A stretch of 64,000 bases of DNA from Haliotis rufescens (taxonomy: Eukaryota), in contig NW_025964301.1 of NCBI RefSeq assembly GCF_023055435.1, positions 1,550,001 through 1,614,000 of the forward strand, written 5' to 3'. Numbering within the stretch: the stretch's first letter is position 1; each line of letters begins with the position of its first letter. This document shows, piece by piece, positions 1 to 28,599 of this stretch. A program made the position numbers and the translations under genes. Below the pieces are notes generated by a model. It was not told the DNA's origin, did no database searches, and worked only from the letters and a program-made list of their open reading frames with translations.

Positions 1-1168
1 CCTGGATTGTATGCGGTAGCGTTCATGGCGACAACAGAAGGACATTTGTGGTTGTATCCCCGAGGCTGATCCAGATAGGTGGGGGAAAATCCCGACCCCT
101 CCCCTTTAAAAATGCTGGATCCACCCTTGGAATACAGGAACTACATAAATAAAATAAGTACTTAAAATTTTAGGTAATACTGTCAGGAAATGAGATTCTG
201 AATGGTGGGATAATACTTTTCTGGGCACTACGACTATCACGTTACACCTGTGGAACGATTCTTCGAGCGATACGATGGTATCAGTAGGTTATACGTATCG
301 ATACAACACTAGTGCCAAATTCGCCGTATTATACGTCCTGCTCCAGTAAGTAAATCTGTCAATAATCTTTGTAAGCGCACCCTACTACGTATACTAAGAC
401 CGAAAAGGTAATAACAGTCTGTATTTCATGAGTATATTAGATATATTTACAGAACACGGAATCTTAGAAGTGCTATATAATTACCTGGTTTTGAACTTTT
501 ATAGAAACATTTTTAAGGTTTAATGACGTTTGAGCTAAGATTTTTTCAATGCCGCTCTATCCCTGAATATAAATTTAACTCGTTTTTATGGTTTTAATAA
601 GCGTCCCAGTTTGTCAAATTGTGGGCCAAGTGCTCTTATTAAGGCGAATACGACCAATATATGATGGACATGTCAAATGGTGTGAACATAAAGTATAAAA
701 TGTTATTTTCTGCTTGTAAGTAGAAGCGTCTCAAACGACGTTCTTAATTAATTGTCTCAAATTGACTGAGTATGTTTCAGTTGGTCTATAATTCATTTAA
801 TATTTCTTTAACATGTCAAGTGTCGAATTTACATGAATGGTGTTGTGTCACATATCGCGACTTTACAATTTGACTTTACACGCTAGGTGTCCTGAATAAA
901 TGTGTTGTTATCTGAGAGAGAAACAAATACACCTTCCGAAACAATAACCGAAACATTACCTTTGTCTCCAACAGTCCAAGGCTTCCATTACCGTCTACCT
1001 TGGGCCTAGGTGAGCTTATGAAAAATGAACAAAGTTTAATTTGAAAGATAAACAGATTTAATTAGCGCAAGCACAAAACCAGAAGAGCCAAATATATTGT
1101 CCAAAAAATGTCTAAAATGTAAAGAGCACTGTGATCTAAATAAGACAATGTCACAAGATGTCACTGAT

Positions 1169-2322
1169 TCAAGCGTCCATCTTGCGAGCACGGAACACAC
1201 TCCTGAAGAAGCCGGTCACACGAGATCTGATGGTTCTCACAGTGGACTGGGGCTGTGTGACTTCCTCGTGGAGGTCAATCTCTTCGAAGTGGGAGGCATC
1301 AGGGAGGGTGGGGCTGGTGAGGGACACGGAGGTGGACACGGGGGTAGGGGTGTGGGAGGCGGGCAGTTCAGACAGGGGGTCAAGGATGGTGAAGTATCGG
1401 CACGTAGCACGCTGATAGGAAGGTGGAGAAGAATTGATAGACAGAGATAGAAAGAGGTGGAAGTGTATGTTACAAGCAGCATTGGATGAGTGTTATGCTG
1501 TTAGAGAAATGTGAGAGGAAGACCCAATGAACAGAACTGCCTGTTGTCACTAGCTATCGATAGTACTTATTACCTACCATGGTGTCAAGAATACAAATCT
1601 CAGGCAAAAGTTGTGTTAAAAATACATGCACTTAGATGAAATAAAATAGTCAACAAACATGATGTTATTATTCCCGATTCAACCTACTTGGCGGGGAGGG
1701 GCCCAGATATCAAAGTTCAGGGGGAATCTGATGATCAGATCTACAGGTGCAACAGCAAAGAAGAAAGACATATAAAAAAGTTGTTTTTTTAAATATCCGA
1801 AATTTAGCTTTCAAAACATGCTGTAAATAACGCCGTGAGTGGTGATTTAGTAATGTGTAAAAAATGGCGACATTTACGATGTACCTAATTTTCAGAGGTC
1901 ATTTTCAGTACTTTTGCTTGGCCTCTGTGTGTGTGATGTATTTTGAATTTTATTCGACTTCAAAGTGGGGGTTGAAGAGGAGGGACATATATGTCCCTCT
2001 GGCATTCAGGGGGTTATTTGATCTTTTTTGTTTTCAAAATTTCGCTCGCGAATACTTCGCGGATGATCACTAGCAGTGCTATGCATGGGAACGTTCAATG
2101 CTTTCATTAAACAAAGTCTGAGAAAACCAAAACGGCAACAGCTCCAGCTAAAAAAACTACAAAACACAATCGAAATGTTTTTGAAACTAAACAAATCTGT
2201 TCGAGTTGGGCTACTATCCATTGATTAAAACAAAGAAATAAGGGTATAATGAGACGAAATGTCCGAATCAATGAGACCTAGATACCTTTATCGTACTGGT
2301 TCATATTAGCGTAGGTAGACAT
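1169..2322 (-). CDS. Orphan 110-aa protein, copy 1; exons 2322-2286, 1740-1688, 1411-1169
   Basis: ATG...AAAG|gtatct; ttctttgctgttgcacctgtag|ATCTG...CCAA|gtaggt; ttcttctccaccttcctatcag|CGTGCT...TGA. Phases 1 and 0 match; 37+53+243=333 nt. Protein MSTYANMNQYDKDLIIRFPLNFDIWAPPRQRATCRYFTILDPLSELPASHTPTPVSTSVSLTSPTLPDASHFEEIDLHEEVTQPQSTVRTIRSRVTGFFRSVFRARKMDA. ATTAAA lies ~107 nt past the stop (1062-1057). Confidence 0.78.
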
Positions 2323-3723
2323 GATCCCAATACAACGTAGACAAGTGATGAATACTGAGTGTGACAAGTTCAGTGACAGCAATGGCGATGACCGTTTAGA
2401 TCAAGAGTGAATCGTCGTCAAGGCAACGTCATGAATCTCGCGAGAAAGTAGTAGAATCTCGTAGCCGTCCAGATGAAACACTCTCAACCCTTTGAGCAGA
2501 TGGAGATATCAAACCTGACACATGTCGCATTTATGTACGAACACCAGCATTTATTACTCAAAATAAACTTTATACGACCCCCTTGTCAAAGGGGGGCTAC
2601 TCTAATCCTGTGAGATCGCCGAATGAAGTTACGCCCCCTCGATGTTTCGCAAATGTTGAAAGAGTTTCGACCCCTCCCCTTTAAAAATGCTGGATCCACC
2701 CTTGGAATACAGGAACTACATAAATAAAATTAGTACTTAAAATTTTAGGTAATACCCTCAGGAAATGAGATTCTGAATGGTAGGATAATACTTTTCTGGG
2801 CACTACGACTATCACGTTACACCTGTGGAACGATTCTTCGAGCGATACGATGGTATCAGTAGGTTATACGTATCGATACAACACTAGTGCCAAATTCGCC
2901 ATATTATACGTCCTGCTCCAGTTAGTAAATCTGTAAATAATCTTTGTAAGCGCACCCTACTAAGACCGAAAAGGTAATAACAGTCTGTATTTCATGAGTA
3001 TATTAGATATATTTACAGAACACGGAATCTTAGAAGGGCTATATAATTACTTGGTTTTAAACTATTATAGAAACATTTTTAAGGTTTAATGACGTTTGAG
3101 CTAAGATTTTTTCAATGCCGCTCTATCCCTGAATATAAATTTAACTCGTTTTTATGGTTTTAATAAGCGTCCCAGTTTGTCAAATTGCCGGCCAAGTGCT
3201 CTAATTAAGGCGAATACGGCCAATATATGGTTGACATGTCAAATGGTATGAACATAAAGTATAAAATGTTATTTTCTGCTTGTAAGTAGAAGCGTCTCAA
3301 ACGACGTTCTTAATTAATTGTCTCAAATCGACTGAGTATGTTTCAGTTGGTCTATAATTCATTTAATATTTCTTGTGTCGAATTTACATGTATGGTGTTG
3401 TGTCTTATATCGCGACTTTACAATTTGACTTTACACGCTAGGTGTCCTGAATCAATGTGTTGTTATCTGAGAGAGAAACAAATACACCTTCCGAAACAAT
3501 AACCGAAACATTACCTTTGTCTCCAACAGTCCGAGGCTTCCATTACCGTCTACCTTGGGCCTAGGTGAGCTTATGAAAAATGAACAAAGGTTAATTTGAT
3601 AGATAAACAGATTTAATTAGCGCAAGCACAAAACCAGAAGAGCCAAATATATTGTCCAAAAAATGTCTAAAATATAAAGAGCACTGTGATCTAAATAAGA
3701 CAATGTCACAAGATGTCACTGAT

Positions 3724-4936
3724 TCAAGCGTCCATCTTGCGAGCACGGAACACACTCCTGAAGAAGCCGGTCACACGAGATCTGATGGTTCTCACAGTGG
3801 ACTGGGGCTGTGTGACTTCCTCGTGGAGGTCAATCTCTTCGAAGTGGGAGGCATCAGGGAGGGTGGGGCTGGTGAGGGACACGGAGGTGGACACGGGGGT
3901 AGGGGTGTGGGAGGCGGGCAGTTCAGACAGGGGGTCAAGGATGGTGAAGTATCGGCACGTAGCACGCTGATAGGAAGGTGGAGAAGTATTTATAGACAGA
4001 GATAGAAAGTGGTGGACGTGTATATTACAAGCAGCATTGGATGAGTATTGTGCTGTTAGGGAAATGTGAGAGGAAGACACAATGAACAGAACTGCCTGGT
4101 GTCACTAGCTATCGATAGTACTTATTACGTATGTCAAGAATACAAATCTCAGGCAAACATTGTGTTAAAAATACATGCACTTAGATGAAATAAAATAGTC
4201 AACAAACATGATGTTATTATTCCCGATTCAACCTACTTGGCGGGGAGGGGCCCAGATTTCAAAGTTCAGGGGGAATCTGATGATCAGATCTACAGGTGCA
4301 ACAGCAAAGAAGAAAGACATATAAAAAAGTTATTTTTTAAATATCCGAAATTTAGCTTTCAAAACATGCTGTAAATAACGCCGTGAGTGGTGATTTAGTA
4401 ATGTGTAAAAAATGGCGACATTTACGATGTACCTATTTTCAGAGGTCATTCTCAGTACTTTTGGTGGCCTAAAATGCCAGTTAAAGGTATCACAGAAAAG
4501 GGAATTTCCTACATTATTCAAAACTGTGAAGTGTTTCTGTGTGTGTGTGATGTATTTTGAATTTTATTGGACTTCAAAGTGGGGGTTGAAGAGGAGGGAC
4601 ATATATGTCCCTCTGGCATCCAGGGGGTTATTTGATCTTTTTTGTTTTTAAAATTTCGCTCGCGAATACTTCGCGGATGATCACTAGCAGTTCTATGCAT
4701 GGGAACGTTCAATGCTTTCATGAAACAAAGTCTGAGAAAACCAAAACGGCAACATCGCCAGCTCAAAAAACTACAAAACACAATCGAAATGTTATTGAAA
4801 CTAAACAAATCTGTTCGAGTTGGGCTACTATGCATTGATTAAAACAAAGAAATAAGGGTGTATTGAGACGAAATGTCCGAACCAATGAGACCTAGATACC
4901 TTTATCGTACTGGTTCATATTAGCGTAGGTAGACAT
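3724..4936 (-). CDS. Orphan 110-aa protein, copy 2 (D23E); exons 4936-4900, 4289-4237, 3966-3724
   Basis: Same splice sites and exon lengths as copy 1; ORF intact. Confidence 0.78.
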
Positions 4937-6347
4937 GATCCCAATACAACGTAGACAAGTGATGAATACTGAGTGTGACAAGTTCAGTGACAGCAATGGC
5001 GATGACCGTTTAGATCAAGAGTGAATCGTCGTCAAGGCAACGTCATGAATCTCGCGAGAAAGTAGTAGAATCTCGTAGCCGTCCAGATGAAACCCTCTCA
5101 ACCCTCTGAGCAGATGGAGATATCAAACCTGACACATGTCGCATTTCTGTACGAACACCAGCATTTATTACTCAAAATAAACTTTATACGACCCCCTTGT
5201 CAAAGGGGGGCTACTCTAATCCTGTGAGATCGCCGAATGAAGTTACGCCCCCTCGATGTTTCGCAAATGTTGAAAGAGTTTCGACCCCTCCCCTTTAAAA
5301 ATGCTGGATCCACCCTTGGAATACAGGAACTACATAAATAAAATTAGTACTTAAAATTTTAGGTAATACTGTCAGGAAATGAGATTCTGAATGGTGGGAT
5401 AATACTTTTCTGGGCACTACGACTATCACGTTACACCTGTGGAACGATTCTTCGAGCGATACGATGGTATCAGTAGTTATACGTATCGATACAACACAAG
5501 TGCCAAATTCGCCGTATTATACGTCCTGCTCCAGTTAGTAAATCTGTAAATAATCTTTGTAAGCGCACCCTACTAAGACCGAAAAGGTAATAACAGTCTG
5601 TATTTCATGAGTATATTAGATATATTTACAGAACATGGAATCTTAGAAGGGCTATATAATTACTTGGTTTTGAACTATTATAGATACATTTTTAAGGTTT
5701 AATGACGTTTGAACTAAGATTTTTTCAAAGCCGCTCTATCCCTGAATATAAATTTAACTCGTTTTTATGGTTTTAATAAGCGTCCCACTTTGTCAAATTG
5801 CCGGCCAAGTGCTCTTATTAAGGCGAATACGGCCATTATATGGTGGACATGTCAAATGGTATGAACATAAAGTATAAAATGTTATTTTCTGCTTGTAAGT
5901 AGAAGCGTCTCAAACGACGTTCTTAATTAATTGTCTCAAATTGACTGAGTATGTTTCAGTTGGTCTATAATTCATTTAATATTTCTTTAACATGTCAAGT
6001 GTCGAATTTACATGTATGGTGTTGTGTCACATATCGCGACTTTACAATTTGACTTTACACGCTAGGTGTCCTGAATAAATGTGTTGTTATCTAAGAGAGA
6101 AACAAATACACCACCCGAAATAATAACCGAAACATTACCTTTGTCTCCAACAGTCCGAGGCTTCCATTACCGTCTACCTTGGGCCTAGGCGAGCTTATGA
6201 AAAATGAACAAAGGTTAATTTGATAGATAAACAGATTTAATTAGCGCAAGCACAAAACCAGAAGAGCCAAATATATTGTCCAAAAAATGTCTAAAATATA
6301 AAGAGCACTGTGATCTAAATAAGACAATGTCACAAGATGTCACTGAT

Positions 6348-9300
6348 TCAAGCGTCCATCTTGCGAGCACGGAACACACTCCTGAAGAAGCCGGTCACAC
6401 GAGATCTGATGGTTCTCCCAGTGGACTGGGGCTGTGTGACTTCCTCGTGGAGGTCAATCTCTTCGAAGTGGGAGGCATCAGGGAGGGTGGGGCTGGTGAG
6501 GGACACGGAGGTGGACACGGGGGTAGGGGTGTGGGAGGCGGGCAGTTCAGACAGGGGGTCAAGGATGGTGAAGTATCGGCACGTAGCACGCTGATAGGAA
6601 GGTGGAAAGTATTTATAGACAGAGATAGAAAGTGGTGGACGTGTATGTTACAAGCAGCATTGGATGAGTGTTATGCTGTTAGAGAAATGTGAGAGGAAGA
6701 CACAATGAACAGAACTGCCTGGTGTCACTAGCTATCGATAGTACTTATTACGTATGTCAAGAATACAAATCTCAGGCAAACATTGTGTTAAAAATACATG
6801 CACTTAGATGAAATAAAATAGTCAACAAACATGATGTTATTATTCCCGATTTAACCTACTTGGCGGGGAGGGGCCCAGATATCAAAGTTCAGGGGGAATC
6901 TGATGATCAGATCTACAGGTGCAACAGCAAAGAAGAAAGACATATAAAAAAGTTGTTTTTTTAAATATCCTAAATTTAGCTTTCAAAACATGCTGTAAAT
7001 AACGCCGTGAGTGGTGATTTAGTAATGTGTAAAAAATGGCGACATTTACGATTTACCTAATTTTCAGAGGTCATTTTTAGTACTTTTGCTTGGCCTAAAA
7101 TGCCAGTGAAAGGTATCACAGAATTCCTACATTATGTGTAGGATATGGTCCGAAAAGTCACGAATATTTTTGCACGTGGGGTCAGTTCGAGGCCGTCAGG
7201 CCGAGAACTTGCCCCACGTGCAAAAATAATCGTGACTTTGAGGACTATATCCTACTTAAAACAAAGTCCCATTCAAAATACATGTTAAACTAATGTCCAC
7301 CCAATATGCACGTGCATATATAATGGAGGGTCGTTCTTGTTTATGCTGAATCGATTGAAACTGCGCGCATGAACGCGCTAAAGTTCGAGCAAAACTATTG
7401 GAGGTCTCGTCTAATATGAGCGTGGAAAAGCACGTGCGATTTCTCATTTAGCTTTCAGTCTTTGTACGTGATGAACATTCATTACACGAGCTCGAACCAG
7501 GCAGCAATTAACTCAGATTTTGAAAGACTCATTTATGCTCATATTGAAATACTTGACGTGGCTGTACCAGATTTTGATGTGGGTAAAAGTGATATCTTGG
7601 AATCAGATGAGTTGTCTGGAAATGATACAGATTTGGTGGAACTCTCTCAACACGTAGAAGCAAGTATTCCCCAGGCCATACAAATTCCCGTTGCAACTCA
7701 TAACATTGATGACGCAGATAGTATTTGGAATTCCTAACCGTTTAGCAAGCCTGTGTCAGAGCAAGATCTTCAAAGTCTAAATTGTAATTCGGCTTTTTCT
7801 CAGAACACAGAAAACAAGAGTAGATAGGCCGTCGACGTCTTCCAAGCGCGGGTCAAGGAAAGACAATCCCATGGGTTACGTGATGACGTCGTGTTAAACC
7901 CCGACAGTATTGCTCTTTCGCATCGTGAAACAGATATTAATAAAAAATCTCATGCGTTTCTTGGTGGAAGTACGAAACCTAAACGGCGAAAAATATCGGG
8001 GAAATACGTTATATGAACTGATCGCGATCGCCTCATCGCAATACTATCGCCGAAGATATCCAGATTAACGTTAACGAGTCTCCTTATTTCAAGGGGATGA
8101 GAAACGTCTTGGATGCTCGAAAGAAGTCATTAGCTAAGCAGGGTATTGGCATTTAGAAAAGACAGGCAAATGTTGTTTCTGTCAGAAATCATGGTAGTTT
8201 TATAGTGTTAACACAAATACAGGACTGTTCCTGTATTTGGGGTTTAGTGCCCTTTTGGGATCTGCCGCCTCTGGTCCTGCTATCTCAACTTCGAAAACGT
8301 TGACATCCACTGCCTCTACATCGGCTGAGGCAACGTTGACAGCTACAGCGGTGACCTGTGAAGATCCGGGGTAGTATAGGTCTTCAGCAACCAATGCTTG
8401 CTGTACAAGGCGACTATGCTTGCTGTAAAAGGCGACTATGCTTGTCGTAAAAGGCGGCTAACGGGATCGAGTTGTCAGGATATCAATCACTGGATCGTCT
8501 GGTCTAGACTCGATTATTTTCAGACCGCCGTCATATAGCTGGAATATTGCTGAGTGCGGCGTAAAACAACAAACCAACCAACCAACCTACAGCGGTTCTG
8601 GATGAAACATCAACTCTCGCAGTAACTGAATCAACTACAGCCGAGAGTGCAGCACAAAAATCAATGAAACTCGTATTACCAGATTAGGCAACTTTGCCGT
8701 CGTCTTTCTGAAATAAATTTATTTCTAATTTGTCTCAGTTTCATTTGCCTCAGATGTCGGAAATCATGGTAGTTTTATAGTGTTAACACATATACAGGAC
8801 GCTTCTTGTTTTCGGAGTCAAGCGCCCTTTTTAAATACAGAATTTCAGTTATATCACGACGGCATATTACATTTCAGAAGAAAAGCCTGCAAAACCAGGT
8901 TATGTGTTGCAGGGTAACGTGCGAACGTCGACTGGTACATGCAAACCAATCGGGAGCGTAGTTCCTTAACTGATTGAGCGGGTGCGTTTCTACGTTTTGT
9001 CTATCAAAGATCACAAACACGGTTCGACTGACATGATTGGGTAATGGAGTTCAGAACTATTGGAGGTTGAACATTAGTTGATAACTATTGGAGGGTGAAC
9101 ATAAGTTGATAACTATCAGAGGGTGAACATTAGTTGTTAACTATTGGAGAGTTTATCTGCAATACACCGACTACTGGAGGATTACAGTATGAATGTGCAT
9201 GACCAAGTTCACACAAACATCCATGCGACTTTGTTTTAATCAAAACTATGAAGTGTTTCTGTGTGTGCGATGTATTTTGAATTTTATTCGACTTCAAAGT

Positions 9301-9656
9301 GGGGGTTGAAGAAGAGGGACATATATGTCCCTCTGGCATCCAGGGGGTTATTTGATTTTTTTTGTTTTCAAAATTTCGCTCGCGAATACTTCGCGGATGA
9401 TCACTAGCAGTTCTATGCATGGGAACGTTCAATGCTTTCATGAAACAAAGTCTGAGAAAACCAAAACGGCAACAGATCCAGCTCAAAAAACTACAAAACA
9501 CAATCGAAATGTTATTGAAACTAAACAAATCTGTTCGAATTGGGCTACTATGCATTGATTAAAACAAAGAAATAAGGGTGTAATGAGACGAAATGTCCGA
9601 ACCAATGAGACCTAGATACCTTTATCGTACTGGTTCATATTAGCGTAGGTAGACAT
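6348..9656 (-). CDS. Orphan 110-aa protein, copy 3 (V88G); exons 9656-9620, 6912-6860, 6590-6348; intron 1 enlarged by Crypton insertion
   Basis: Same splice sites and exon lengths; ORF intact. Confidence 0.74.
7136..9239 (+). mobile_element. Decayed, internally deleted Crypton-type (tyrosine-recombinase, DUF3504/ZMYM-QRICH1-like) DNA transposon
   Basis: Absent from other units (empty site cctacattat|tcaaaact) and has no TSD. Broken reading frame ~7470-8180 gives ...MRFLVEVRNLNGEKYRGNTLYELI...PYFKGMRNVLDARKKSLAKQGIGI*KRQANVVS, typical of the region N-terminal to the Crypton YR domain. A 118-nt terminal hairpin lies at 7138-7255. Confidence 0.8.
8353..8586 (+). mobile_element. SINE family B copy nested in the Crypton
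   Basis: gacctgtgaagatccgggg head, (AACC)n tail, 10-bp TSD ctacagcggt (8343-8352 / 8587-8596). Confidence 0.88.
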
Positions 9657-11052
9657 GATCCCAATACAACGTAGACAAGTGATGAATACTGAGTGTGACA
9701 AGTTCAGTGACAGCAATGGCGATGACCGTTTAGATCAAGAGTGAATCGTCGTCAAGGCGACGTCATGAATCTCGCGAGAAAGTAGTAGAATCTCGTAGCC
9801 GTCCAGATGAAACCCTCTCAACCCTCTGAGCAGATGGAGATATCAAACCTGACACATGTCGCATTTATGTACGAACACCAGCATTTATTACTCAAAATAA
9901 ACTTTATACGACCCCCTTGTCAAAGGGGGGCTACTCTAATCCTGTGAGATCGCCGAATGAAGTTACGCCCCCTCGATGTTTCGCAAATGTTGAAAGAGTT
10001 TCGACCTCTCTAAAAAATGCTGGATCCACCCTTGGAATACAGGAACTACATAAATAAAATTAGTACTTAAAATTTTAGGTAATACTGTCAGGAAATGAGA
10101 TTCTGAATGGTGGGATAATACTTTTCTGGGCACTACGACTATCACGTTACACCTGTGGAACGATTCTTCGAGCGATACGATGGTATCAGTAGTTATACGT
10201 ATCGATACAACACAAGTGCCAAATTCGCCATATTATACGTCCTGCTCCAGTTAGTAAATCTGTAAATAATCTTTGCAAGCGCACCCTACTAAGACCGAAA
10301 AGGTAATAACAGTCTGTATTTCATGAGTATATTAGATATATTTACAGAACACGGAATCTTAGAAGGGCTATATAATTATTTGGTTTTGAACTATTATAGA
10401 AACATTTTTAAGGTTTAATGACGTTTGAGCTAAGATTTTTTCAAAGCCGCTCTATCCCTGAATATAAATTTAACTCGTTTTTATGGTTTTAATAAGCGTC
10501 CCACTTTGTCAAATTGCGGGCCAAGTGCTCTTATTAAGGCGAATACGACCAATATATGATGGACATGTCAAATGGTGTGAACATAAAGTATAAAATGTTA
10601 TTTTCTGCTTGTAAGTAGAAGCGTCTCAAACGACGTTCTTAATTAATTGTCTCAAATCGACTGAGTATGTTTCAGTTGGTCTATAATTCATTTAATATTT
10701 CTTGTGTCGAATTTACATGTATGGTGTTGTGTCTTATATCGCGACTTTACAATTTGACTTAACACGCTAGGTGTCCTGAATCAATGTGTTGTTATCTGAG
10801 AGAGAAACAAATACACCTTCCGAAACAATAACCGAAACATTACCTTTGTCTCCAACAGTCCGAGGCTTCCATTACCGTCTACCTTGGGCCTAGGCGAGCT
10901 TATGAAAAATGAACAAAGGTTTAATTTGAAAGATAAACAGATTTAATTAGCGCTCAAACAAAACCAGAAGAGCCAAATATATTGTCCAAAAATGTCTAAA
11001 ATGTAAAGAGCACTGTGATCTAAATAAGACAATGTCACAAGATGTCACTGAT

Positions 11053-12264
11053 TCAAGCGTCCATCTTGCGAGCACGGAACACACCCCTGAAGAAGCCGGT
11101 CACACGAGATCTGATGGTTCTCACAGTGGACTGGGGCTGTGTGACTTCCTCGTGGAGGTCAATCTCTTCGAAGTGGGAGGCATCAGGGAGGGTGGGGCTG
11201 GTGAGGGACACGGAGGTGGACACGGGGGTAGGGGTGTGGGAGGCGGGCAGTTCAGACAGGGGGTCAAGGATGGTGAAGTATCGGCACGTAGCACGCTGAT
11301 AGGAAGGTGGAGAAGAATTTATAGACAGAGATAGAAAGAGGTGGACGTGTATGTTACAAGCAGCATTGGATGTGTGTTATGCTGTTAGAGAAATATGAGA
11401 GGAAGACACAATGAACAGAAGTGCCTGGTGGCACTAGCTATCGATAGTACTTATTACATATGTCAAGAATACAAATCTCAGGCAAAAGTTGTGTTAAAAA
11501 TACATGCACTTAGATGAAATAAAATAGTCAACAAACATGATGTTATTATTCCCGATTCAACCTACTTGGCGGGGAGGGGCCCAGATATCAAAGTTCAGGG
11601 GGAATCTGATGATCAGATCTACAGGTGCAACAGCAAAGAAGAAAGACATATAAAAAAGTTGGTTTTTTTAATATCCTAAATTTAGCTTTCAAAACATGCT
11701 GTAAATAACGCCGTGAGTGGTGATTTAGTAATGTGTAAAAAATGGCGACATTTACGATGTACCTAATTTTCAGGTCATTTTTAGTACTTTTGCTTGGCCT
11801 AAAATGCGAGTGAACGTTATCACAGAAAAGGGAATTTCCTACATTATTCAAAACTGTGAAGTGTTTCTGTGTGTGTGATGTATTTTGAATTTTATTCGAC
11901 TTCAAAGTTGGGGTTGAAGAGGAGGGACATATATGTCCCTCTGGCATCCAGGGGGTTATTTGATCTTTTTTGTTTTCAAAATTTCGCTCGCGAATACTTC
12001 GCGGATGATCACTAGCAATTCTATGCATGGGAACGTTCAATGCTTTCATGCAACAAAGTCTGAGAAAACCAAAACGGCAACATCGCCAGCTCAAAAAACT
12101 ACAAAACACAATCGAACTGTTATTGAAATTAAACATATCTGTTCGAGTTGGGCTCCTATGCATCGATTAAAACAAAGAAATAAGGGTGTAATGAGACGAA
12201 ATGTCCGAACCAATGAGACCTAGATACCTTTATCGTACTGGTTCATATTAGCGTAGGTAGACAT
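11053..12264 (-). CDS. Orphan 110-aa protein, copy 4 (S101G); exons 12264-12228, 11618-11566, 11295-11053
   Basis: Same splice sites and exon lengths; ORF intact. Confidence 0.78.
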
Positions 12265-12643
12265 GATCCCAATACAACGTAGACAAGTGATGAATACTGA
12301 GTGTGACAAGTTCAGTGACAGCAATGGCGATGACCGTTTAGATCAAGAGTGAATCGTCGTCAAGGCAACGTCATGAATCTCGCGAGAAAGTAGTAGAATC
12401 TCGTAGCCGTCCAGATGAAACACTCTCAACCCTCTGAGCAGATGGAGATATCAAACCTGACACATGTCGCATTTATGTACGAACACCAGCATTTATTACT
12501 CAAAATAAACTTTATACGACCCCCTTGTCAAAGGGGGGCTACTCTAATCCTGTGAGATCGCCAAATGGAGTTACGCCCCCTCGATGTTTTCGCAAATGTT
12601 GAAAGAGTTTCGTTGAAAGTCATTGAAATCGAATAGGTCTGTG
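12265..12643. promoter_or_regulatory. Probable bidirectional promoter between orphan copy 4 and tRNase Z
   Basis: 379 bp between divergent ATGs. Contains the palindrome TCTCGCGAGA (BANP/Kaiso-type promoter motif) at 12378-12387 next to a CRE half-site ACGTCA. The motif is repeated at 2436, 5050 and 9770. Confidence 0.65.
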
Positions 12644-15600
12644 ATGCAATCATGTTACAAGGGTTTGTTCATTTCAACCTCCCGAACGGTAAGGTTGTCA
12701 TGGTTTCCAGTGTGCCGGAGACACTTCATTAGAAGGAGAATGGATGACATTCAGAAATGGATCCAGTGTGGACGATACCGGGTTTTCGCCTGGTCCATAG
12801 CAGGCATGGAGACGAGCGTGGTGGTGAAATCCAACGATCTGGAGGTGGCCTTTGACATGGGTTACTCATCTAGAGAGAGCATCAGATGCAGAGATGTATT
12901 CATCAGGTAATCCGGTAGTCAACTTTAGAGCGTCAGTTACAGGGATGTATTCATCAGGTAGTCAACTTGAGAGCATCAGTTACAGGGATGTATTCATCAG
13001 GTAGTCAACTTGAGAGCATCAGGTGCAGAGATGTATTCATCAGGTAGTCAACTTGAGAGCATCAGGTGCAGAGATGTATTCATCAGGTAATCACCTTGGA
13101 AGTGACAGTTACAGGGATCTGTTAATCCGGTAGTCAAATTGAGAGCATCAGTTACAGGGATGTATTCATCAGGTACTCAAATTGAGAGTGTCAGTTACAG
13201 GGATGTATTCATCAGGTAGTCAACTTGAGAGCCAACTTCAGTTACAGGGATGTATTCATCAAGTAGTCAAATTGAGAGCATCAGTTACAGGGATGTATTA
13301 ATTCGGTAGTCAAATTGAGAGCATCAGTTACAGGGATGTATTCATCAGGTATTTAGCTTGTTGAGAGCTTCAGTTACAGGGATGTATTAATCCGGAAGTC
13401 AACTTGAGAGCATCAGTTTCAGGGATGTATTCATCAGGTAATTAGCTTGTTGAGAGCGTCAGTTTACAGGGATGTATTCATCCGGTAGTCAGCTTGAGAG
13501 CATCAGTTTCAGGGATGTATTCATCAGGTAATTAGCTTGTTGAGAGCGTCAGTTACAGGGATGTATTAATCCGGAAGTCAACTTGAGAGCATCAGTTTCA
13601 GGGATGTATTCATCAGGTAATTAGCTTGTTGAGAGCGTCAGTTTACAGGGATGTATTCATCCGGTAGTCAACTTGAGAGAGTTATTATTGGTAGTTTGCA
13701 AGTGACCATGTGAGTTTGATTTAATTGATTTCCGTACCATGGTAAAATAAAAATAAGGTGCCGTTTTTGCCAGGCAATAGTAGCTGTTTTCCCTTTTGGC
13801 AAGGAGACGTTTTCGCAAATCGGTGTCATTTTCACTTGGTGATGTTATGCTGAGATGCTGTATTAGCTGTAAGCCAGATATAATACCCTACACTAATGAG
13901 GATGTCATAACTGACCCGGGGATGTTTGTGTTCAGCCACGGCCACATGGACCACATCGCGGCATTGCCTCACCACGCCGCCAAGCGAAGTCTGTTCAGTC
14001 TTCCCCGCCCTAACTACTACGTCCCCGCACATCTCCCCGACCTCATCCAATCTGTTGCCCAGGGATACAAGAGTATAGATGAGACGACCACAGCACTGAC
14101 CAACATGAGCATTGTGCCGCTCGGTCCAGATGATGTCGCCAAGGTGAGAGTGTTCTACTGAAACCTATGGTTATATTACTTATATTTCTTTCCATATTAT
14201 AACTGTATGTCTACGTGTAACTGTTATATTTGAAATAACACTTTCTTAATAAAGTACAGATTCGTGTACTTTTTTGGCATGAGTCCCGTCCAGGATTCGA
14301 ACCCACACTGCCAGAGTGAGGCACCTAATCGCCAGCACACAAAGTCAGCGATCTAACCCACTCAGCCACCGAGGCTTCCACAAAAATGAAGTCTGACAAC
14401 TGGTAGTCTAGATAACATACTTTGTGTACCCCTCTGACAAGTGTAAATTGGCATAGCCAAAAGCTATGAACACACAATGCCATTTAGAAAGTGGTCAAAT
14501 GTAACAAATGTTATATTTGGGATAACACTTTCTTAGTAAAGTACAGATTCTCGTACTTTTCCTATATGTCTACATGTCTATATACTGGTGGGAAACAGTT
14601 CCTGTATGTCTACATGTCTATATACTAGTGGGATCAGTTCCTGTATGTCTACATGTCCATATACTGGTGGGAAACAGTTCCTGTATGTCTACATGTCTCT
14701 ATACTAGTGGGATCAGTTCCTGTGTGCCATCATAACTCAAAGTAAATTAAAATTACCATGGATTTTTCAGATTCATGCATGATAATCACATGTACAAACA
14801 CTTTGTTTTGATTACTATGATTACCCGGTGGTTGTCATGGTTATTGTGATTATCAAGAACCATGAATTAAGCCATGACATGACAAAGGCACGGTACAGAC
14901 ATCAGAAACTAGATTGATACCTGTCATAGATGCCAGAATTTGATCAGGAGCCATCTTTGTTTCTTTTTTATGTTAATCCTGATAATCACTTTATCAGTTA
15001 ATCCTAACCAGGGATTTACAAAAACTAGACCTGCTCAGAGGCCGATACTTTGCCACACATCTGCAGCAATTGTCAGTTGGGCTGGCTATCGATGCAGATC
15101 ATAGAGATCGATAACTGTTAACTAAATATCGATCAATTATTGATTAATATCAGAGAAGTAACTTTAAGCAAATATGCTAAAAAGTCTGAACGAAATCAAG
15201 ACACTTCATGCCACTGATAAGTGGTGACACATTTATGACATTTGTAGACAAAAATGGGGGGCACGGGTGGCCCAGTCGTCTAAGGCGCCGTGATTCGCTG
15301 TGCAGAGTTGTGTCCCTTGGGCATGCCAGAAACCTATGATTGTGGGTTTGTATCCCGGTTCGCCCCAATTATGTTTCTAGGTTTGTCAGCACCATACCCG
15401 TGCTCGTTGGTTTCACCGAAGTGGTCAACGTCTGAGACATGCAACACTTCGGGCTTTCCTCCCACATTAAGCTGACACGCCGTGATATAACTGGAATACT
15501 GTTAAAAGAGGCGTTAAACCCAACTCACTCACTCACTAAAACAAAAAGAGTTGCTTTCCATCTCTGTCAATTGACATGATTGACAATAACAAGTCTGTTT

Positions 15601-23163: not shown

Positions 23164-26100
23164 GTGACGTCACTGTGGTGGGAAGGGGCTAGTGGGGTGA
23201 TGTCACTTTGGTGGGAAGGGGGCTAGTCGGGTGATGTCACTGTGGTGGGAAGGTTGGTGTCACTGTGGTGGGAAGGGGGCTAGTGGGGTGATGTCACTGT
23301 GGTGGGAAGGTTGGTGTCACTGTGGTGTGAAGGAGGATAGTGGGGTGATGTTACTGTGGTGGGAAGGAGGTTAGTGGGGTGATGTCACTGTGGTGGGAAG
23401 GGGGCTAGTAGGGTGATGTCACTGTGGTGGGAAGGTTGGTGTCACTGTGGTGGGAAGGGGGCTAGTGGGGTGATGTTACTGTGGTGTGAAGGAGGTTAGT
23501 GGGGTGATGTTACTGTGGTGGGAAGGGGGCTAGTGGGGTGATGTCACTGTGTAGGAAGGGGTCTAGTGGAGTGATGTCACTGTGGTGGGAATTGGGCTAG
23601 TGGGGTGATGTCACTGTGGTGGGAAAGTTGGTGTCACTGTGGTGTGAAGGAGGATAGTGGGGTGATGTTACTGTGTAGGAAGGGGTCTAGTGGGGTGATG
23701 TCACTGTGTAGGAAGGGGGCTAGTGGGGTGATGTCACTGTGGTGGGTAGGAGGCTAGTGGGGTGATGCCACTGTGTAGGAAGGGGTCTAGTGGGGTGATG
23801 TCACTGTGGTGGGAATTGGGCTAGTGGGGTGATGTCACTGTGGTGGGAAGGTTGGTGTCACTGTGGTGGGAAGGAGGATAGTGGGGTGATGTTACTGTGG
23901 TGGGAAGGAGGTTAGTGGGGTGATGTCAGTGTGGTGGGAAGGGGGCTAGTAGGGTGATGTCACTGTGGTGGGAAGGTTGGTGTCACTGCGGTGGGAAGGG
24001 GGCTAGTGGGGTGATGTTACTGTGGTGTGAAGGAGGTTAGTGGGGTGATGTCACTGTGTAGGAAGGGATCTAGTGGGGTGATGTCACTGTGGTGGGAATT
24101 GGGCTAGTGGGGTGATGTCACTGTGGTGGGAAAGTTGGTGTCACTGTGGTGTGAAGGAGGATAGTGGGGTGAAGTCACTGTGTAGGAAGGGGTCTAGTGG
24201 GGTGATGTCACTGTTGTTGGAATTGGGCTAGTGGGATGATGTCAGTGTGGTGGGAAGGGGCCTTGTGGTGTGATGTCACTGTGGTGGGAAGGGGGCTTGT
24301 GGGTTGATGTCACTGTGGTGGGAAGGGTGATGTCAGTGTGGTGGGAAGGGGGCTTGTGGGGTGATATCAGTGTGGTGGGAAGGAGGCTAGTGGGGTGATG
24401 TCAGTGTGGTGGGAAGGGGGCTAGTGGGGTTATGGCAGTGTGGTGGGAAGGAGGCTAGTATGACGATGTCAGTGTGGTGGGAAGGAGGCTAGTTGGGTGA
24501 TGTCACTGTGGTGGGAAGGAGGCTAGTAAGATGATGTCAGTGTGGTGGGAAGGGTGATGTCACTGTGGTGGGAAGGGTGATGTCACTGTGGTGGGAAGGG
24601 GGCTTGTGGGGTGATATCAGTGTGGTGGGAAGGAGGCTAGTGGGGTGATGTCAGTGTGGTGGGAAGGGGGCTAGTGGGGTTATGGCAGTGTGGTGGGAAG
24701 GAGGCTAGTATGACGATGTCAGTGTGGTGGGAAGGAGGCTAGTGGGGTGATGTCACCATGGTGGGAAGGAGGCTAGTAGGATGATGTCAGTGTGGTGGGA
24801 AGGGGGCTTGTGGTGTGATGTCACTGTGGTGGGAAGGGGCTAGTTGGGTGATGTCACTGTGGTGGGAAGGAGGCTAGTAGGATGATGTCAGTGTGGTGGG
24901 AAGGGGGCTAGTGGGATGATGTCAGTGCGGTTGGAAGGGGGCTAGTTGGGTGATGTCAGTGTGGTGGGAAGGGTGATGTCACTGTGGTGGGAAGGGGGCT
25001 ATCGGGGTGATGTCACTGTGGTGGGAAGGGTGATGTCACTGTGGTGGGAAGGGTGATGTCAGTGCGGTGGGAAGGGGGCTTGTGGGGTGATGTCAGTGTG
25101 GTGGGAAGGAGGCTAGTGGGGTGATGTCACTGTGGTGGGAAGGGGGCTTGTGGGGTGATGTCACTGTGGTGGGAAGGAGGCTAGTAGGATGATGTCAGTG
25201 TGGTAGGAAGGGGCTTGTGGGGTGATGTCAGTGTGTTGGGAAGGAGGCTAGTGGGGTGATGTCACTGTGGTGGGAAGGGGCCTTGTGGTGTGATGTCACT
25301 GTGGTGGGAAGGGGGCTTGTGGGGTGATGTCACTGTGGTGGGAAGGAGGCTAGTAGGATGATGTCAGTGTGGTGGGAAGGAGGCTTGTGGGGTGATGTCA
25401 GTGTGGTGGGAACGAGGCTATTGGGGTTATGTCAGTGTAGTGGGAAGGGGGCTTGTGGGGTGATGTCACTGTGGTGGGAAGGAGGCTAGTAGGATGATGT
25501 CAGTGTGGTGGGAAGGGGCTTGTGGGGTGATGTCAGTGTGGTGGGAACGAGGCTAGTGGGGTGATGTCAGTGTGGTTGGAAGGGGGCTTGTGGGGTGATG
25601 TCAGTGTGGTGGGAACGAGGCTAGTGGGGTGATGTCACTGTGGTGGGAAGGGGGCTTGTGGGGTGATATCAGTGTGGTGGGAATGCGGCTAGTGGGGTGA
25701 TGTCAGTGTGGTGGGAAGGGGGCTAGTGTGGTTATGTCAGTGTGGTGGGAAGGAGGCTAGTATGACGATGTCAGTGTGGTGGGAAGGAGGCTAGTGGGGT
25801 GATGTCACTGTGGAGGGAAGGGTGATGTCACTGGTGGGAAGGGGGCTTGTGGTGTGATGTCACTGTGGTGGGAAGGGGCTAGTTGGGTGATGTCACTGTG
25901 GTGGGAAGGAGGCTAGTAGGACGATGTCAGTGTGGTGGGAAGGAGGCTAGTGGGGTGATGTCAGTGTGGTGGGAAGGGTGATGTCACTGTGGTGGGAAGG
26001 GGGCTTGTGGTGTGATGTCACTGTGGTGGGAAGGAGGCTAGTGGGGTGATGTCAGTGTGGTGGGAAGGGGGCTAGTGGGGTTATGTCAGTGTGGTGGGAA

Positions 26101-27966
26101 GGAGGCTAGTATGACGATGTCAGTGTGGTGGGAAGGAGGCTAGTGGCGTGATGTCACTGTGGAGGGAAGGGTGATGTCACTGTGGTGGGAAGGGGGCTTG
26201 TGGTGTGATGTCACTGTGGTGGGAAGGGGGTTTGTGGTGTGATGTCACTGTGGTGGGAGGGAGGCTAGTTGGACGATGTCAGTGTGGTGGGAAGGAGGCT
26301 AGTAGGATGATGTCAGTGTGGTGGGAAGGGGGCTAGTAGGATAATGTCACTGTGGTGGGAAGGAGGCTAGTGGGGTGATGTCAGTGTAGTGGGAAGGGGG
26401 CTAGTGGGGTTATGTCACTGTGGTGGGAAGGAGGCTAGTATGACGATGTCAGTGTGGTGGGAAGGAGGCTAGTAGGACGATGTCAGTGTGGTGGGAAGGA
26501 GGCTAGTGGGGTGATGTCACTGTGGAGGGAAGGGTGATGTCACTGTGGTGGGAAGGGGCTAGTTGGGTGATGTCACTGTGGTGGGAAGGAGGCTAGTAGG
26601 ATGATGTCAGTGTGGTGGGAAGGGGGCTAGTAGGATGATGTCAGTGTGGTGGGAAGGAGGCTAGTGGGGTGATGTCAGTGTGGTGGGAAGGGGGCTAGTG
26701 GGGTTATGTCAGTGTGGTGGGAAGGAGGCTAGTATGACGATGTCAGTGTGGTGGGAAGGAGGCTAGTAGGACGATGTCAGTGTGGTGGGAAGGAGGCTAG
26801 TGGGGTGATGTCAGTGTGGTGGGAAGGGTGATGTCACTGTGGTGGGAAGGGGGCTTGTGGTGTGATGTCACTGTGGTGGGAAGGAGGCTAGTGGGGTGAT
26901 ATCAGTGTGGTGGGAAGGAGGCTAGTGGGGTGATGTCAGTGTGGTGGGAAGGGGGCTAGTGGGGTTATGTCAGTGTGGTGGGAAGGAGGCTAGTATGACG
27001 ATGTCAGTGTGGTGGGAAGGAGGCTAGTGGGGTGATGTCACTGTGGAGGGAAGGGTGATGTCACTGTGGTGGGAAGGGGGCTTGTGGTGTGATGTAACTG
27101 TGGTGGGAAGGGGCTAGTGGGGTGATATCACTGTGGTGGGAAGGAGGCTAGTTGGACGATGTCAGTGTGGTGGGAAGGAGGCTAGTGGGGTGATGTCACT
27201 GTGGTGGGAAGGGTGATGTCACTGTGGTGGGAAGGGGGCTAGCGGGGTGATGTCACTGTGGTGGGAAGGGGGGCTAGTGTGGTGATGTCACTGTTGTGGG
27301 AAGGGAGCTAGCAGGGTGATGTCACTGTGGTGGGAAGGGGCTAGTTGGGTGATGTCACTGTGGTGGGAAGGAGGCTAGTAGGATGATGTCAGTGTGGTGG
27401 GAAGGGGGCTAGTAGGATGATGTCACTGTGGTGGGAAGGAGGCTAGTGGGGTGATGTCAGTGTGGTGGGAAGGGGGCTAGTGGGGTTATGTCAGTGTAGT
27501 GGGAAGGAGGCTAGTATGACGATGTCACTGTGGTGGGAAGGGGGCTTGTGGTGTGATGTCACTGTGGTGGGAAGGGGCTAGTTGGGTGATGTCACTGTGG
27601 TGGGAAGGAGGCTAGTAGGACGATGTCAGTGTGGTGGGAAGGAGGCTAGTGGGGTGATGTCACTGTGGAGGGAAGGGTGATGTCACTGTGGTGGGAAGGG
27701 GCTAGTTGGGTGATGTCACTGTGGTGGGAAGGAGGCTAGTAGGATGATGTCAGTGTGGTGGGAAGGGGGCTAGTAGGATGATGTCAGTGCGGTGGGAAGG
27801 GGGCTAGTTGGGTGATGTCACTGTGGTGGGAAGGGTGATGTCACTGTGGTGGGAAGGGGGCTAGCGGGGTGATGTCACTGTGGTGGGAAGGGGGGCTAGT
27901 GTGGTGATGTCACTGTTGTGGGAAGGGAGCTAGCAGGGTGATGTCACTGTGGTGGGAAGGGGGCTT
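23164..27966. repeat. G-rich minisatellite (33-34-bp unit plus 23-bp short variant), ~4.8 kb
   Basis: tgatgtca(c/g)tgtggtgggaagg(a/g)ggctagtgggg repeated. Confidence 0.97.
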
Positions 27967-28599
27967 ATGGATGTTTAGCCGTCGCATTGAACTGTCAGAT
28001 GTATATAAAGGTTGACAAGTCAAAACTGTAAATTGCCATACTCTTTCAGAATTTGTAGAGGTGGATTTGTTGGAATCGCCATTTGGTATTTTTTCTCTCA
28101 AGAGTCGTTCATCACTGCAGTGAATTAATAAAGACTTCCCCGAGTAGCTGCCAGCTCCACCAGCAAGAGTTATAATCTGCACAGGTGGTGGGATTATCGA
28201 TATCCATTGTATCGCAGTTTCTGAACAACGCCAAGTCCAGCGAGACTAATTACATGGCCCTTTACGTCATACATAACCGGTAACAACGCGCTAGCCTGTC
28301 ATGGCAGCTGTAGAGTTATGTCCCTTGGTCGATAGTGTGTGTATCAATCCATGCCACCAGGGGGCAGTGACAGCCATGTTCGGATTAACACAAAACACTT
28401 GAATAGTAAGGCCATTTACGAGGATTGATTGATGAGGTTTACGCTTCACGTGAGAATTAGACACTACAAGATGTCATAGAGGCATAGCCAAAAAACCTGA
28501 GTCATTTGAACAAATTGTTTCGCTGTGACAAATCAGTGAAAGAAGCAGATAAATTGACAAACTTGGTGAACGTGCAGGGGTCAAGTACTTGTAGACTGT

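What the first reader, a model, noticed from the sequence alone, without database searches (positions are those of the whole stretch)
1169..12264. Hidden four-copy array of an intact 3-exon gene encoding an unrecognised 110-aa protein
Seen: each 2.6-kb unit has a 37-nt ATG exon, a 53-nt exon open in only one frame, and a 243-nt last exon. They are joined by GT-AG introns with polypyrimidine tracts, and the phases (1, 0) fit exactly. There is a promoter-type TCTCGCGAGA ~115 nt upstream and ATTAAA downstream. All four copies keep the ORF and every splice site. Exons differ by only 3 substitutions across the four copies, while adjacent intron sequence carries many SNPs and indels. Inference: a recently amplified, dosage-selected lineage-specific gene. 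I recognise no family, and the ORF track shows only fragments or antisense shadows of it.
Basis: partly seen in the sequence, partly recalled or inferred. Interest (0 to 1): 0.85.

Follow-up and report, generated by a model that had tools for sequence, protein, structure and literature searches.

The report
Abalone tandem array, small disordered protein
The window holds four intact tandem copies of a real three-exon red-abalone gene for a 110-residue, largely unstructured protein; public annotation already lists all four as "uncharacterized protein", and they belong to an unstudied abalone-only family of about 80 genes, so this is a real gene array with unknown function, not a hidden or new kind of gene.

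Summary
Observation confirmed. Four minus-strand copies each have exons of 37, 53 and 243 nt, GT-AG introns in phases 1 and 0, TCTCGCGAGA 123 nt before the ATG and ATTAAA 107 nt after the stop. The exons differ by three substitutions.

Interpretation partly supported. The window is Haliotis rufescens. The four spliced translations are letter-identical to RefSeq XP_048241312, XP_048241313, XP_048241311 and XP_046360221 ("uncharacterized protein LOC..."), so the genes are not hidden.

They are one branch of an abalone-restricted family:
- About 79 last-exon copies lie in tandem arrays on at least 17 contigs of this genome.
- 24 protein clusters were found, all from Haliotis species.
- The exon plan, a roughly 45-bp promoter block and several short motifs are shared.

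Coding selection is supported. The coding sequence (CDS) has 3/333 variable sites against 52/809 in introns (p=1e-5). Only the sense frame is open in all paralogues. Codon position 3 varies more than 1, and 1 more than 2. dN/dS (omega) is about 0.55.

AlphaFold predicts disorder plus one C-terminal basic amphipathic helix. The most conserved motif is an acidic F-x-[DE]-[IV]-x-L, which resembles an LIR/FIR motif.

No Pfam, PDB or literature match was found. No RNA evidence was obtained: the four runs laid were DNA. Function and dosage selection remain untested. The scan had not noted this family before.

The parts
93..12612 (-). Whole tandem array: spacer, gene A, spacer, gene B, spacer, gene C, spacer, gene D with 348 bp of its upstream region
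   Evidence: Self-BLAST of the unit. Four spacer copies in the genome, all here.
2436..2445 (-). Copy A promoter CGCG element TCTCGCGAGA (palindrome), part of the conserved block that runs to about 2375
2286..2322 (-). Copy A exon 1 (ATG, 37 nt, ends in phase 1)
1688..1740 (-). Copy A exon 2 (53 nt)
1169..1411 (-). Copy A exon 3 (243 nt including the TGA). The product is identical to XP_048241312 (P0003).
1057..1062 (-). Copy A ATTAAA, 107 nt after the stop
5050..5059 (-). Copy B CGCG element
4900..4936 (-). Copy B exon 1
4237..4289 (-). Copy B exon 2 (one substitution, D23E)
3724..3966 (-). Copy B exon 3. The product is identical to XP_048241313 (P0005).
3612..3617 (-). Copy B ATTAAA
9770..9779 (-). 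Copy C CGCG element
9620..9656 (-). Copy C exon 1
7097..9257 (.). 2161-bp insertion in intron 1 of copy C. The splice sites are untouched.
   Evidence: Break in the unit alignment. Intron 1 is 2707 nt against 545-610 nt in the other copies.
6860..6912 (-). Copy C exon 2
6348..6590 (-). Copy C exon 3 (one substitution, V87G). The product is identical to XP_048241311 (P0007).
6236..6241 (-). Copy C ATTAAA
12378..12387 (-). Copy D CGCG element. It lies about 260 bp from the start of the plus-strand neighbouring gene (12644).
12228..12264 (-). Copy D exon 1
11566..11618 (-). Copy D exon 2
11053..11295 (-). Copy D exon 3 (one substitution, S100G). The product is identical to XP_046360221 (P0004).
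10942..10947 (-). Copy D ATTAAA

Best explanation
This is a four-copy local tandem duplication (unit about 2.56 kb) of a genuine three-exon protein-coding gene of the red abalone, Haliotis rufescens. RefSeq already lists the copies as LOC125371587, LOC125371599, LOC125374441 and LOC124137811. That reading has odds of about 0.9.

The gene is the 110-aa branch of an abalone-restricted family of roughly 80 genes for 95-118-aa proteins. Family members share:
- the same exon plan;
- a conserved TATA-less promoter block: the CGCG element TCTCGCGAGA, then TGACG-type sites, then ATCGCCATTG;
- the motifs DL-x-IRFPLNFDIWAPP, PLS-x-LP and an acidic D-x3-F-x-[DE]-[IV]-x-L;
- a C-terminal basic amphipathic helix that ends in KMDA in this branch.

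How it most likely works is inference, not shown. The protein has no fold of its own. It probably acts as a small cytosolic or nuclear adaptor or regulator (odds about 0.5). In that reading it docks on a partner through the invariant acidic F-x-x-[IV]-x-L strand motif and holds on to a membrane or an acidic surface with its helix. The motif has the form of an LIR/FIR motif, as in optineurin's DS-FVEI. ATG8-family proteins or FIP200 are therefore the first partners to test (odds about 0.2). SUMO or exportin are alternatives.

The four copies are kept intact by purifying selection on the protein. There is an extra, unexplained lack of synonymous change.
For: Identity:
- The spliced translations of A, B, C and D equal P0003, P0005, P0007 and P0004 letter for letter.

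Coding constraint:
- CDS 3/333 variable sites against 52/809 in introns, p=1.2e-5. Three nonsynonymous changes against 16 expected, p=6e-5.
- 5'UTR plus core promoter: 1/128 variable.
- Of 20 fetched paralogous loci, 18 yielded a last exon with an open frame ending at the shared stop position. One more ends differently (L009), and the dispersed C523 fragment has lost its stop. For one locus the script found no acceptor.
- Only the sense frame is open in every paralogue.
- Mean pairwise difference by codon position is 0.204, 0.149 and 0.257 (p=3.5e-5).
- Median dN/dS is 0.55.

Family:
- 122 exon matches in the genome, of which I counted about 79 last exons on at least 17 contigs.
- 24 protein clusters, all from Haliotis.
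- F18, D68, F72, L77 and S93 are invariant across 29 proteins.

Promoter:
- The block is conserved between the C523, C490 and C57 arrays, with exon 1 about 137 nt downstream of it.
- The motif is the published CGCG or BANP element of housekeeping promoters (PMC6192621, PMC2920758).

Structure:
- Two AlphaFold2 runs gave pLDDT 58 and only a helix at 85-107.
- The helix has muH 0.63-0.76 and net charge +4 to +6.

Motif:
- The LIR and FIR consensus and optineurin's DS-FVEI are given in PMC7615515.
Against: - No RNA evidence was obtained. The four runs laid carry contigs that cross exon-intron borders and show no splice joints, so they are DNA.
- The promoter motif and ATTAAA are consensus matches only. 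The transcription start site is unknown.
- The partner motif is short and degenerate. The same letters also fit SIM-like or NES-like readings, and no binding test could be run.
- In the 110-aa branch the residues before the aromatic are A-S-H, less acidic than in a strong LIR.
- dN/dS of about 0.55 is only moderate constraint.
- All three exon differences are nonsynonymous and none is synonymous. Simple protein-level selection does not predict that.
Confidence: 0.75

Rival explanations
1. The exon uniformity is mainly produced by concerted evolution, that is, gene conversion between copies, possibly GC-biased, and not by purifying selection on a needed protein. The copies may be of little individual importance.
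For: - No synonymous change in about 80 synonymous sites, where 5.1 are expected from the intron rate (P=0.005).
- GC3 is 0.70 against an intron GC of 0.37.
- The few parsimony-informative sites conflict: 5, 2 and 2 for the three groupings.
- A 65-bp intron-1 indel is shared by A/C against B/D.
Against: - Conversion tracts would not stop at the borders of three separate exons of 37, 53 and 243 nt while leaving both introns 3-4% diverged and the 3'UTR variable.
- 52 of 61 variable sites are private to one copy, so the pattern is star-like divergence.
- Across old paralogues (dS about 0.55) the frame, the stop position and the motifs are still kept.
Confidence: 0.2
2. These are young duplicates that simply have not had time to decay. 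The extra copies are neutral by-products of unequal crossing-over, and there is no selection for dosage.
For: - The copies differ by only 2-4%.
- Within other arrays of the family, recent copies show pN about equal to pS.
- A truncated copy 160 kb away has lost its stop and its promoter.
- Expression is unmeasured.
Against: - At the intron rate, about 16 nonsynonymous and some disabling changes are expected over the four copies. Three were seen, and none is disabling.
- Promoter and splice sites are intact in all four copies, including copy C with a 2.2-kb intron insertion.
- At least six genes of the same branch are kept in H. cracherodii, three of them with the identical protein.
Confidence: 0.12
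3. The ORF is not translated. The conserved unit is a non-coding transcript or a promoter element, or the true gene is the antisense ORF over exon 3.
For: - Two plus-strand ORFs of 85 and 117 aa overlap exon 3 in each copy.
- The product is disordered and matches no known family.
Against: - The antisense frames carry 1-9 stops in nearly all paralogues, while the sense frame has none in any.
- Codon-position periodicity is present.
- Splice phases, the stop position and residue-level motifs are conserved over dS of about 0.55.
- NCBI's pipeline built the same models in four species.
Confidence: 0.03
4. The array is a mobile-element or macrosatellite product, with the small ORF as a passenger carried around the genome.
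For: - Family arrays sit on at least 17 contigs.
- A 697-bp genomic fragment of this gene lies 160 kb away in the opposite orientation.
- The spacer holds a roughly 290-bp interspersed repeat.
Against: - Apart from that short repeat, the spacer is unique to this array.
- The unit has no terminal inverted or long direct repeats, no long ORF and no Rfam match.
- Units in different arrays differ in size (2.6 kb against about 7 kb) and share only the gene and its promoter.
Confidence: 0.03

Closest known systems
RefSeq models XP_048241312.1, XP_048241313.1, XP_048241311.1 and XP_046360221.2 (H. rufescens 'uncharacterized protein' LOC125371587, LOC125371599, LOC125374441, LOC124137811), with XP_071115956-62 of H. 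cracherodii
   Same: The H. rufescens models are letter-identical to the four spliced translations. Three H. cracherodii proteins are identical to copy A.
   Different: Nothing differs; they are the same genes. The records give no function, and no paper cites the locus names.
Paralogous Haliotis branches of 101-104 aa (P0009, P0031, P0035, P0037), 112 aa (P0012) and 95-118 aa (P0038-P0049)
   Same: - Three exons in phases 1 and 0.
- The promoter block with TCTCGCGAGA.
- The FPL motif, the PLS-x-LP motif and the acidic F-x-[DE]-[IV]-x-L motif.
- A C-terminal amphipathic helix.
   Different: - Identity to the 110-aa branch is 32-64%.
- The 110-aa branch has a new in-frame ATG 18 nt upstream, adding 6 residues.
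- Its unit is 2.6 kb instead of about 7 kb.
- It has F-E-E-I where the others have F-V-[DE]-[IV].
LIR/AIM and FIR short linear motifs of selective-autophagy receptors, for example optineurin DS-FVEI (PMC7615515)
   Same: An aromatic-x-x-[I/V] core sits in a disordered, acidic and Ser/Thr-rich setting. Distant family members read D-T-D-F-V-E-[IV], almost the optineurin core.
   Different: The resemblance is at motif level only. There is no homology to any receptor, no ubiquitin-binding or cargo domain, and binding is untested. The 110-aa branch has a weaker acidic flank.
CGCG element (BANP, ZBED1 or Kaiso motif) promoters of vertebrate housekeeping and ribosomal-protein genes (PMC6192621, PMC2920758)
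   Same: An exact 10-bp palindrome lies close upstream of the first exon in a TATA-less context. At copy D it sits between two divergent genes, as in the bidirectional promoters described.
   Different: The element was described in vertebrates. Its use in molluscs, the binding factor and the transcription start site here are not known.
Repeat protein of the jellyfish Rhopilema esculentum (XP_065069079, P0011) and an unnamed ENA protein (P0010)
   Same: A roughly 20-residue stretch, repeated 7-16 times, resembles the C-terminal helix.
   Different: Each repeat scores only 5-11 bits. The low E-value comes from adding up the repeats. The rest of the protein does not match, so I treat this as chance or convergence.

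Membership tests
Abalone 95-118-aa disordered-protein family (unnamed; RefSeq 'uncharacterized protein') | Three coding exons, with intron phases 1 then 0 | tested here: met
   All four copies. The same donor and acceptor positions occur in the C490 and C57 units.
Abalone 95-118-aa disordered-protein family (unnamed; RefSeq 'uncharacterized protein') | Significant full-length sequence similarity to the other members | tested here: met
   E-values of 1e-15 to 1e-50 to 24 Haliotis clusters. Identity is 32-64%.
Abalone 95-118-aa disordered-protein family (unnamed; RefSeq 'uncharacterized protein') | Invariant residues F18, D68, F72, L77 and S93, and a C-terminal amphipathic helix | tested here: met
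   Alignment A5, AF2 helix at 85-107, muH.
Abalone 95-118-aa disordered-protein family (unnamed; RefSeq 'uncharacterized protein') | Shared promoter block: TCTCGCGAGA, TGACG sites and ATCGCCATTG | tested here: met
   Alignment A4 of the C523, C490 and C57 promoters.
LIR/AIM-containing ATG8 interactors | Core [W/F/Y]-x-x-[L/I/V] | tested here: met
   F72-E-E-I75. F72 is invariant, and I or V occupies the +3 position in all 29 proteins. Consensus from PMC7615515.
LIR/AIM-containing ATG8 interactors | Acidic, Ser or Thr residues at positions -1 to -3 | tested here: inconclusive
   The 110-aa branch has A-S-H before F72, with D68 at -4. Distant branches have D-T-D or D-S-D.
LIR/AIM-containing ATG8 interactors | Motif lies in an accessible disordered region | tested here: met
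   AF2 gives no regular structure at 60-84 and pLDDT of 55-60.
LIR/AIM-containing ATG8 interactors | Physical binding to the LIR docking site of an ATG8-family protein | not testable with these tools
   The abalone ATG8 genes are multi-exon. A joined model may not be sent to the tools, so no complex prediction was run.
CGCG-element (BANP-motif) promoters | Exact TCTCGCGAGA close to the gene start | tested here: met
   Four matches, all 123 nt before an ATG, against 0.01 expected.
CGCG-element (BANP-motif) promoters | Position within a few tens of bp of the transcription start, and occupancy by BANP, ZBED1 or Kaiso | not testable with these tools
   No RNA 5' ends or ChIP data were available.
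Any Pfam family or solved structure | Profile match | tested here: not met
   No Pfam hit at E<=10 for exon 3, nor at E<=1 for 25 members. No PDB hit at E<=10. ESM Atlas best score was 0.80, which is chance level.

The most novel reading that the evidence does not exclude
The roughly 80-gene abalone family is a lineage-specific invention of small disordered adaptors. Their invariant acidic F-x-[DE]-[IV]-x-L motif would dock on ATG8-family proteins or FIP200, and their basic amphipathic helix on membranes. That would make them a genus-restricted, massively amplified set of autophagy or trafficking regulators driven by a housekeeping-type CGCG promoter. The complete lack of synonymous change in this array would then reflect selection on the mRNA or on codon use for very high output.
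Probability: 0.1. Interest if true: 0.6.

Novelty: already known. Interest (0 to 1): 0.3.

Why it matters
For the scan, the case shows that a reader working from raw sequence can reconstruct a correct spliced gene model. It also shows that 'hidden' has to be checked against public annotation.

For biology, the modest point of interest is the family and not this array. About 80 intact genes for about 100-residue unstructured proteins are confined, as far as these searches see, to abalones. They are arranged in tandem arrays on many chromosomes. They keep a promoter block and a few short motifs, and they have no paper, name or function.

Such taxonomically restricted, amplified families are candidates for lineage-specific physiology, such as stress response, development or reproduction. 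They are also useful material for studying how orphan genes are born, amplified and kept. The family gives testable handles: one invariant docking motif, one helix and one promoter element.

Tried and rejected
1. RNA evidence. The look-up of sequencing runs listed no holder on record as RNA. I laid four 'RNA?' runs from four studies on window:3700-9690 (5991 letters). Their contigs run straight across exon-intron borders and intergenic DNA, and none of the 15 joints listed (12 more not shown) lies at an exon border, so they are DNA. This says nothing about expression.

Exon-versus-intron comparison between species was therefore not possible.

3. Intron gain. tblastn seemed to show exons 1 and 2 fused in other branches. 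This was read-through of the pyrimidine tract. Exon 1 was then found about 1.8 kb upstream in the C490 and C57 units, behind the same promoter. Rejected.

4. Jellyfish, oomycete and ENA hits of the all-library phmmer search. They are sums of many 5-13-bit repeat matches. Rejected as homologues.

5. The antisense ORF as the real gene. Rejected.

6. cDNA-templated conversion as the cause of exon-only uniformity. The 3'UTR is not uniform. Not supported.

7. Mobile-element or satellite origin. Rejected.

8. A two-unit (A-B to C-D) duplication history. The indel pattern suggests it, but the substitutions do not. Unresolved.

9. ESM Atlas. The best score was 0.80, at chance level.

10. Fold search was not run, because both models are low-confidence (pLDDT 58) and the matches would be meaningless.

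11. Complex prediction was not run. The only partner worth testing is an abalone ATG8-family protein, which exists here only as separate exons.

12. Joined spliced model. Exon 3 was searched by reference, and full-length searches used the database proteins by id. The exons were joined only inside local scripts, for translation, identity checks and codon counts.

13. Locus names and general terms in the paper library. Nothing was found on this family.

Full report
**What is there**

The window is G000:C523:1550001-1614000 of a 1.33-Gb, 615-contig genome and contains no N. Reading the minus strand of 1100-2500 and joining 2286-2322, 1688-1740 and 1169-1411 in a local script gives a 333-nt frame for 110 residues plus a stop. 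Both introns have GT..AG ends and pyrimidine tracts.

BLAST of the three exons against the window finds exactly four sets:
- A: 2286-2322, 1688-1740, 1169-1411.
- B: 4900-4936, 4237-4289, 3724-3966.
- C: 9620-9656, 6860-6912, 6348-6590.
- D: 12228-12264, 11566-11618, 11053-11295.

All four keep the frame and the splice sites. All have TCTCGCGAGA 123 nt before the ATG and ATTAAA 106-107 nt after the stop. The 10-mer occurs only at these four places in 64 kb, where 0.01 are expected.

The units are 2555, 2624, 4705 and 2555 bp long. Unit C is long because of a 2161-bp insertion (7097-9257) in intron 1. The array runs from 93 to 12612.

**It is not hidden**

Exon 3, searched by reference, hits 110-aa and 109-aa "uncharacterized proteins" of Haliotis cracherodii and H. 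asinina. The 90%-identity cluster holds four H. rufescens RefSeq proteins: XP_048241312, XP_048241313, XP_048241311 and XP_046360221. These are letter-identical to my translations of copies A, B, C and D respectively.

The window is therefore red abalone, and NCBI's pipeline has already built the same four models. From my knowledge of that pipeline, models of orphan proteins are kept only with transcript or protein support. I could not check that here.

H. cracherodii has at least six genes of this branch with consecutive accessions on one contig, three of them with the protein of copy A. H. asinina has one annotated 109-aa orthologue, 82% identical.

**Is it coding and constrained?**

Within the array:
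- The CDS has 3 variable sites in 333. The two introns have 52 in 809, plus indels.
- The 128 bp of 5'UTR and core promoter have 1 variable site.
- Spacers differ by about 2% and introns by 3-4%. Fisher's test for CDS against introns gives p=1.2e-5.
- At the intron rate, 16 nonsynonymous changes are expected and 3 are seen (p=6e-5).
- Oddly, all three exon changes are nonsynonymous (D23E, V87G, S100G). No synonymous change is seen where 5.1 are expected (P=0.005).
- GC3 is 0.70 against an intron GC of 0.37.
- 52 of the 61 variable sites in the region shared by all four copies are private to one copy. This is a star-like pattern, and the few informative sites conflict.

Across the family:
- I fetched 20 paralogous loci. 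For 18 of them the script recovered an open last exon that ends at the shared stop position. L009 ends differently, the dispersed C523 fragment has lost its stop, and for L004 the script found no acceptor.
- Only the sense frame is free of stops in every paralogue.
- Mean pairwise difference by codon position is 0.204, 0.149 and 0.257, and variable columns are enriched at position 3 (p=3.5e-5).
- Nei-Gojobori dN/dS between branches is 0.4-0.75, with a median of 0.55 at dS about 0.55.

This is what a real but partly unconstrained coding sequence looks like. The linker is free to vary and the motifs are fixed.

**The family**

A six-frame search of the genome with a paralogue gives 122 exon matches. 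I counted about 79 last exons on at least 17 contigs, mostly in tandem arrays with spacing of about 7 kb on C490, C57, C66, C112, C312, C390 and C13.

Profile searches of 5.8 billion proteins return 24 clusters, all from H. rufescens, H. cracherodii, H. asinina or H. rubra, and all named "uncharacterized protein". A full phmmer pass over 1.84 billion representatives adds only repeat-inflated chance hits.

Pfam, PDB sequences and the ESM Atlas give nothing. No paper holds the locus names. The scan's own notes do not hold this family.

Exon 1 of the C490 and C57 branches lies about 1.8 kb upstream of exon 2, behind the same promoter block: TCTCGCGAGA, TGACG-type sites, then ATCGCCATTG. The three-exon plan and the promoter therefore predate the split of the branches.

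The 110-aa branch differs in having a new in-frame ATG 18 nt upstream of the family's start.

A 697-bp piece (exon 2 to exon 3) lies 160 kb away at C523:1390266-1390960. It has no exon 1, no promoter and a lost stop, so it is a dead fragment.

**What the protein looks like**

Two AlphaFold2 runs, with 25 and 29 family members as the alignment, give pLDDT 58 and pTM 0.16-0.20. The only regular element is a helix at about 85-107. That helix is amphipathic (muH 0.63-0.76) with net charge +4 to +6 in every branch.

There is no signal peptide or hydrophobic segment by inspection.

Invariant in all 29 aligned proteins are F18, D68, F72, L77 and S93. D68, F72 and L77 belong to D-x3-F-x-[DE]-[IV]-x-L, followed by an acidic run. 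Distant branches read D-T-D-F-V-E-[IV]-D-L. This has the form of an LIR or FIR motif, and the optineurin motif is DS-FVEI (PMC7615515). The same letters could also serve as a SUMO-interaction or export motif.

**Most likely mechanism (inference)**

The protein is probably a small disordered adaptor or regulator. It would dock by strand addition through the F-x-x-[IV]-x-L motif and use the basic helix for a membrane or an acidic partner. It would be expressed from a TATA-less promoter built on the CGCG element, which is known from vertebrate housekeeping and bidirectional promoters (PMC6192621, PMC2920758).

I put about 0.9 on 'real protein-coding array of this family', about 0.5 on 'motif-and-helix adaptor' and about 0.2 on ATG8 or FIP200 as the partner.

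The abalone ATG8 genes are split into exons. Because a joined model may not be sent to the tools, no complex was predicted.

**What could not be done**

- The look-up of sequencing runs listed no holder on record as RNA, and the four runs laid proved to be DNA.
- Expression, dosage selection and the array's history relative to H. cracherodii therefore remain open.
- The joined spliced model was never sent to a search tool. Exon 3 went by reference, and full-length searches used database proteins by id.

**Verdict**

The genes are real and constrained, but they are already annotated and belong to a large, unstudied abalone-only family. Interest is modest.

Noticed in passing
window 7097-9257: A 2161-bp insertion in intron 1 of copy C. 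Its 8300-8700 part has contig depths of about 1e5 in all four DNA runs, so it is a very abundant repeat. It also holds 22-bp and 28-bp tandem repeats at 8394-8460 and 9048-9149.
   Followed up: partly
This may be a bidirectional promoter. The array unit copied this whole region up to about 32 bp before the neighbour's ATG. In copies A-C the other side of the promoter therefore points into spacer DNA.
   Followed up: partly
G000:C523:1390266-1390960 (L001:1666-2360): A 697-bp inverted fragment of the gene (exon 2, intron 2, exon 3) lies 160 kb from the array. It has no exon 1 or promoter, and a 1-bp deletion removes the stop.
   Followed up: yes
window 2298-2322 and equivalents: The 110-aa branch has two in-frame ATGs 18 nt apart. 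The downstream one aligns with the start codon of the other branches, so the first six residues are a branch-specific addition.
   Followed up: partly
window 2928-3220 (spacer): A roughly 290-bp interspersed repeat sits inside each spacer. It gave 104 first-look candidates in the genome, and the scored matches are 68-93% identical. The rest of the spacer is unique to this array.
   Followed up: partly
window 1741-2285, 4290-4899, 6913-9619, 11619-12227: Apart from the transposon, intron 1 is 545-546 nt in copies A and C but 609-610 nt in B and D. This alternating indel hints at duplication of a two-unit block or at conversion. The substitutions do not back either reading.
   Followed up: partly
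window 1169-2322 and equivalents: There is no synonymous difference among the four CDS copies (5.1 expected, P=0.005), although all three differences seen change the protein. GC3 is 0.70 in a genome region of 37-40% GC. Unexplained.
   Followed up: partly
window 12875-13679: A tandem array of a 43-bp unit (17.5 copies, with a higher-order period of 179 bp) lies just beyond the gene array.
   Followed up: no
window 24001-28000: A block with GC 0.57 and a very strong GC skew (+0.7), unlike the rest of the window.
   Followed up: no
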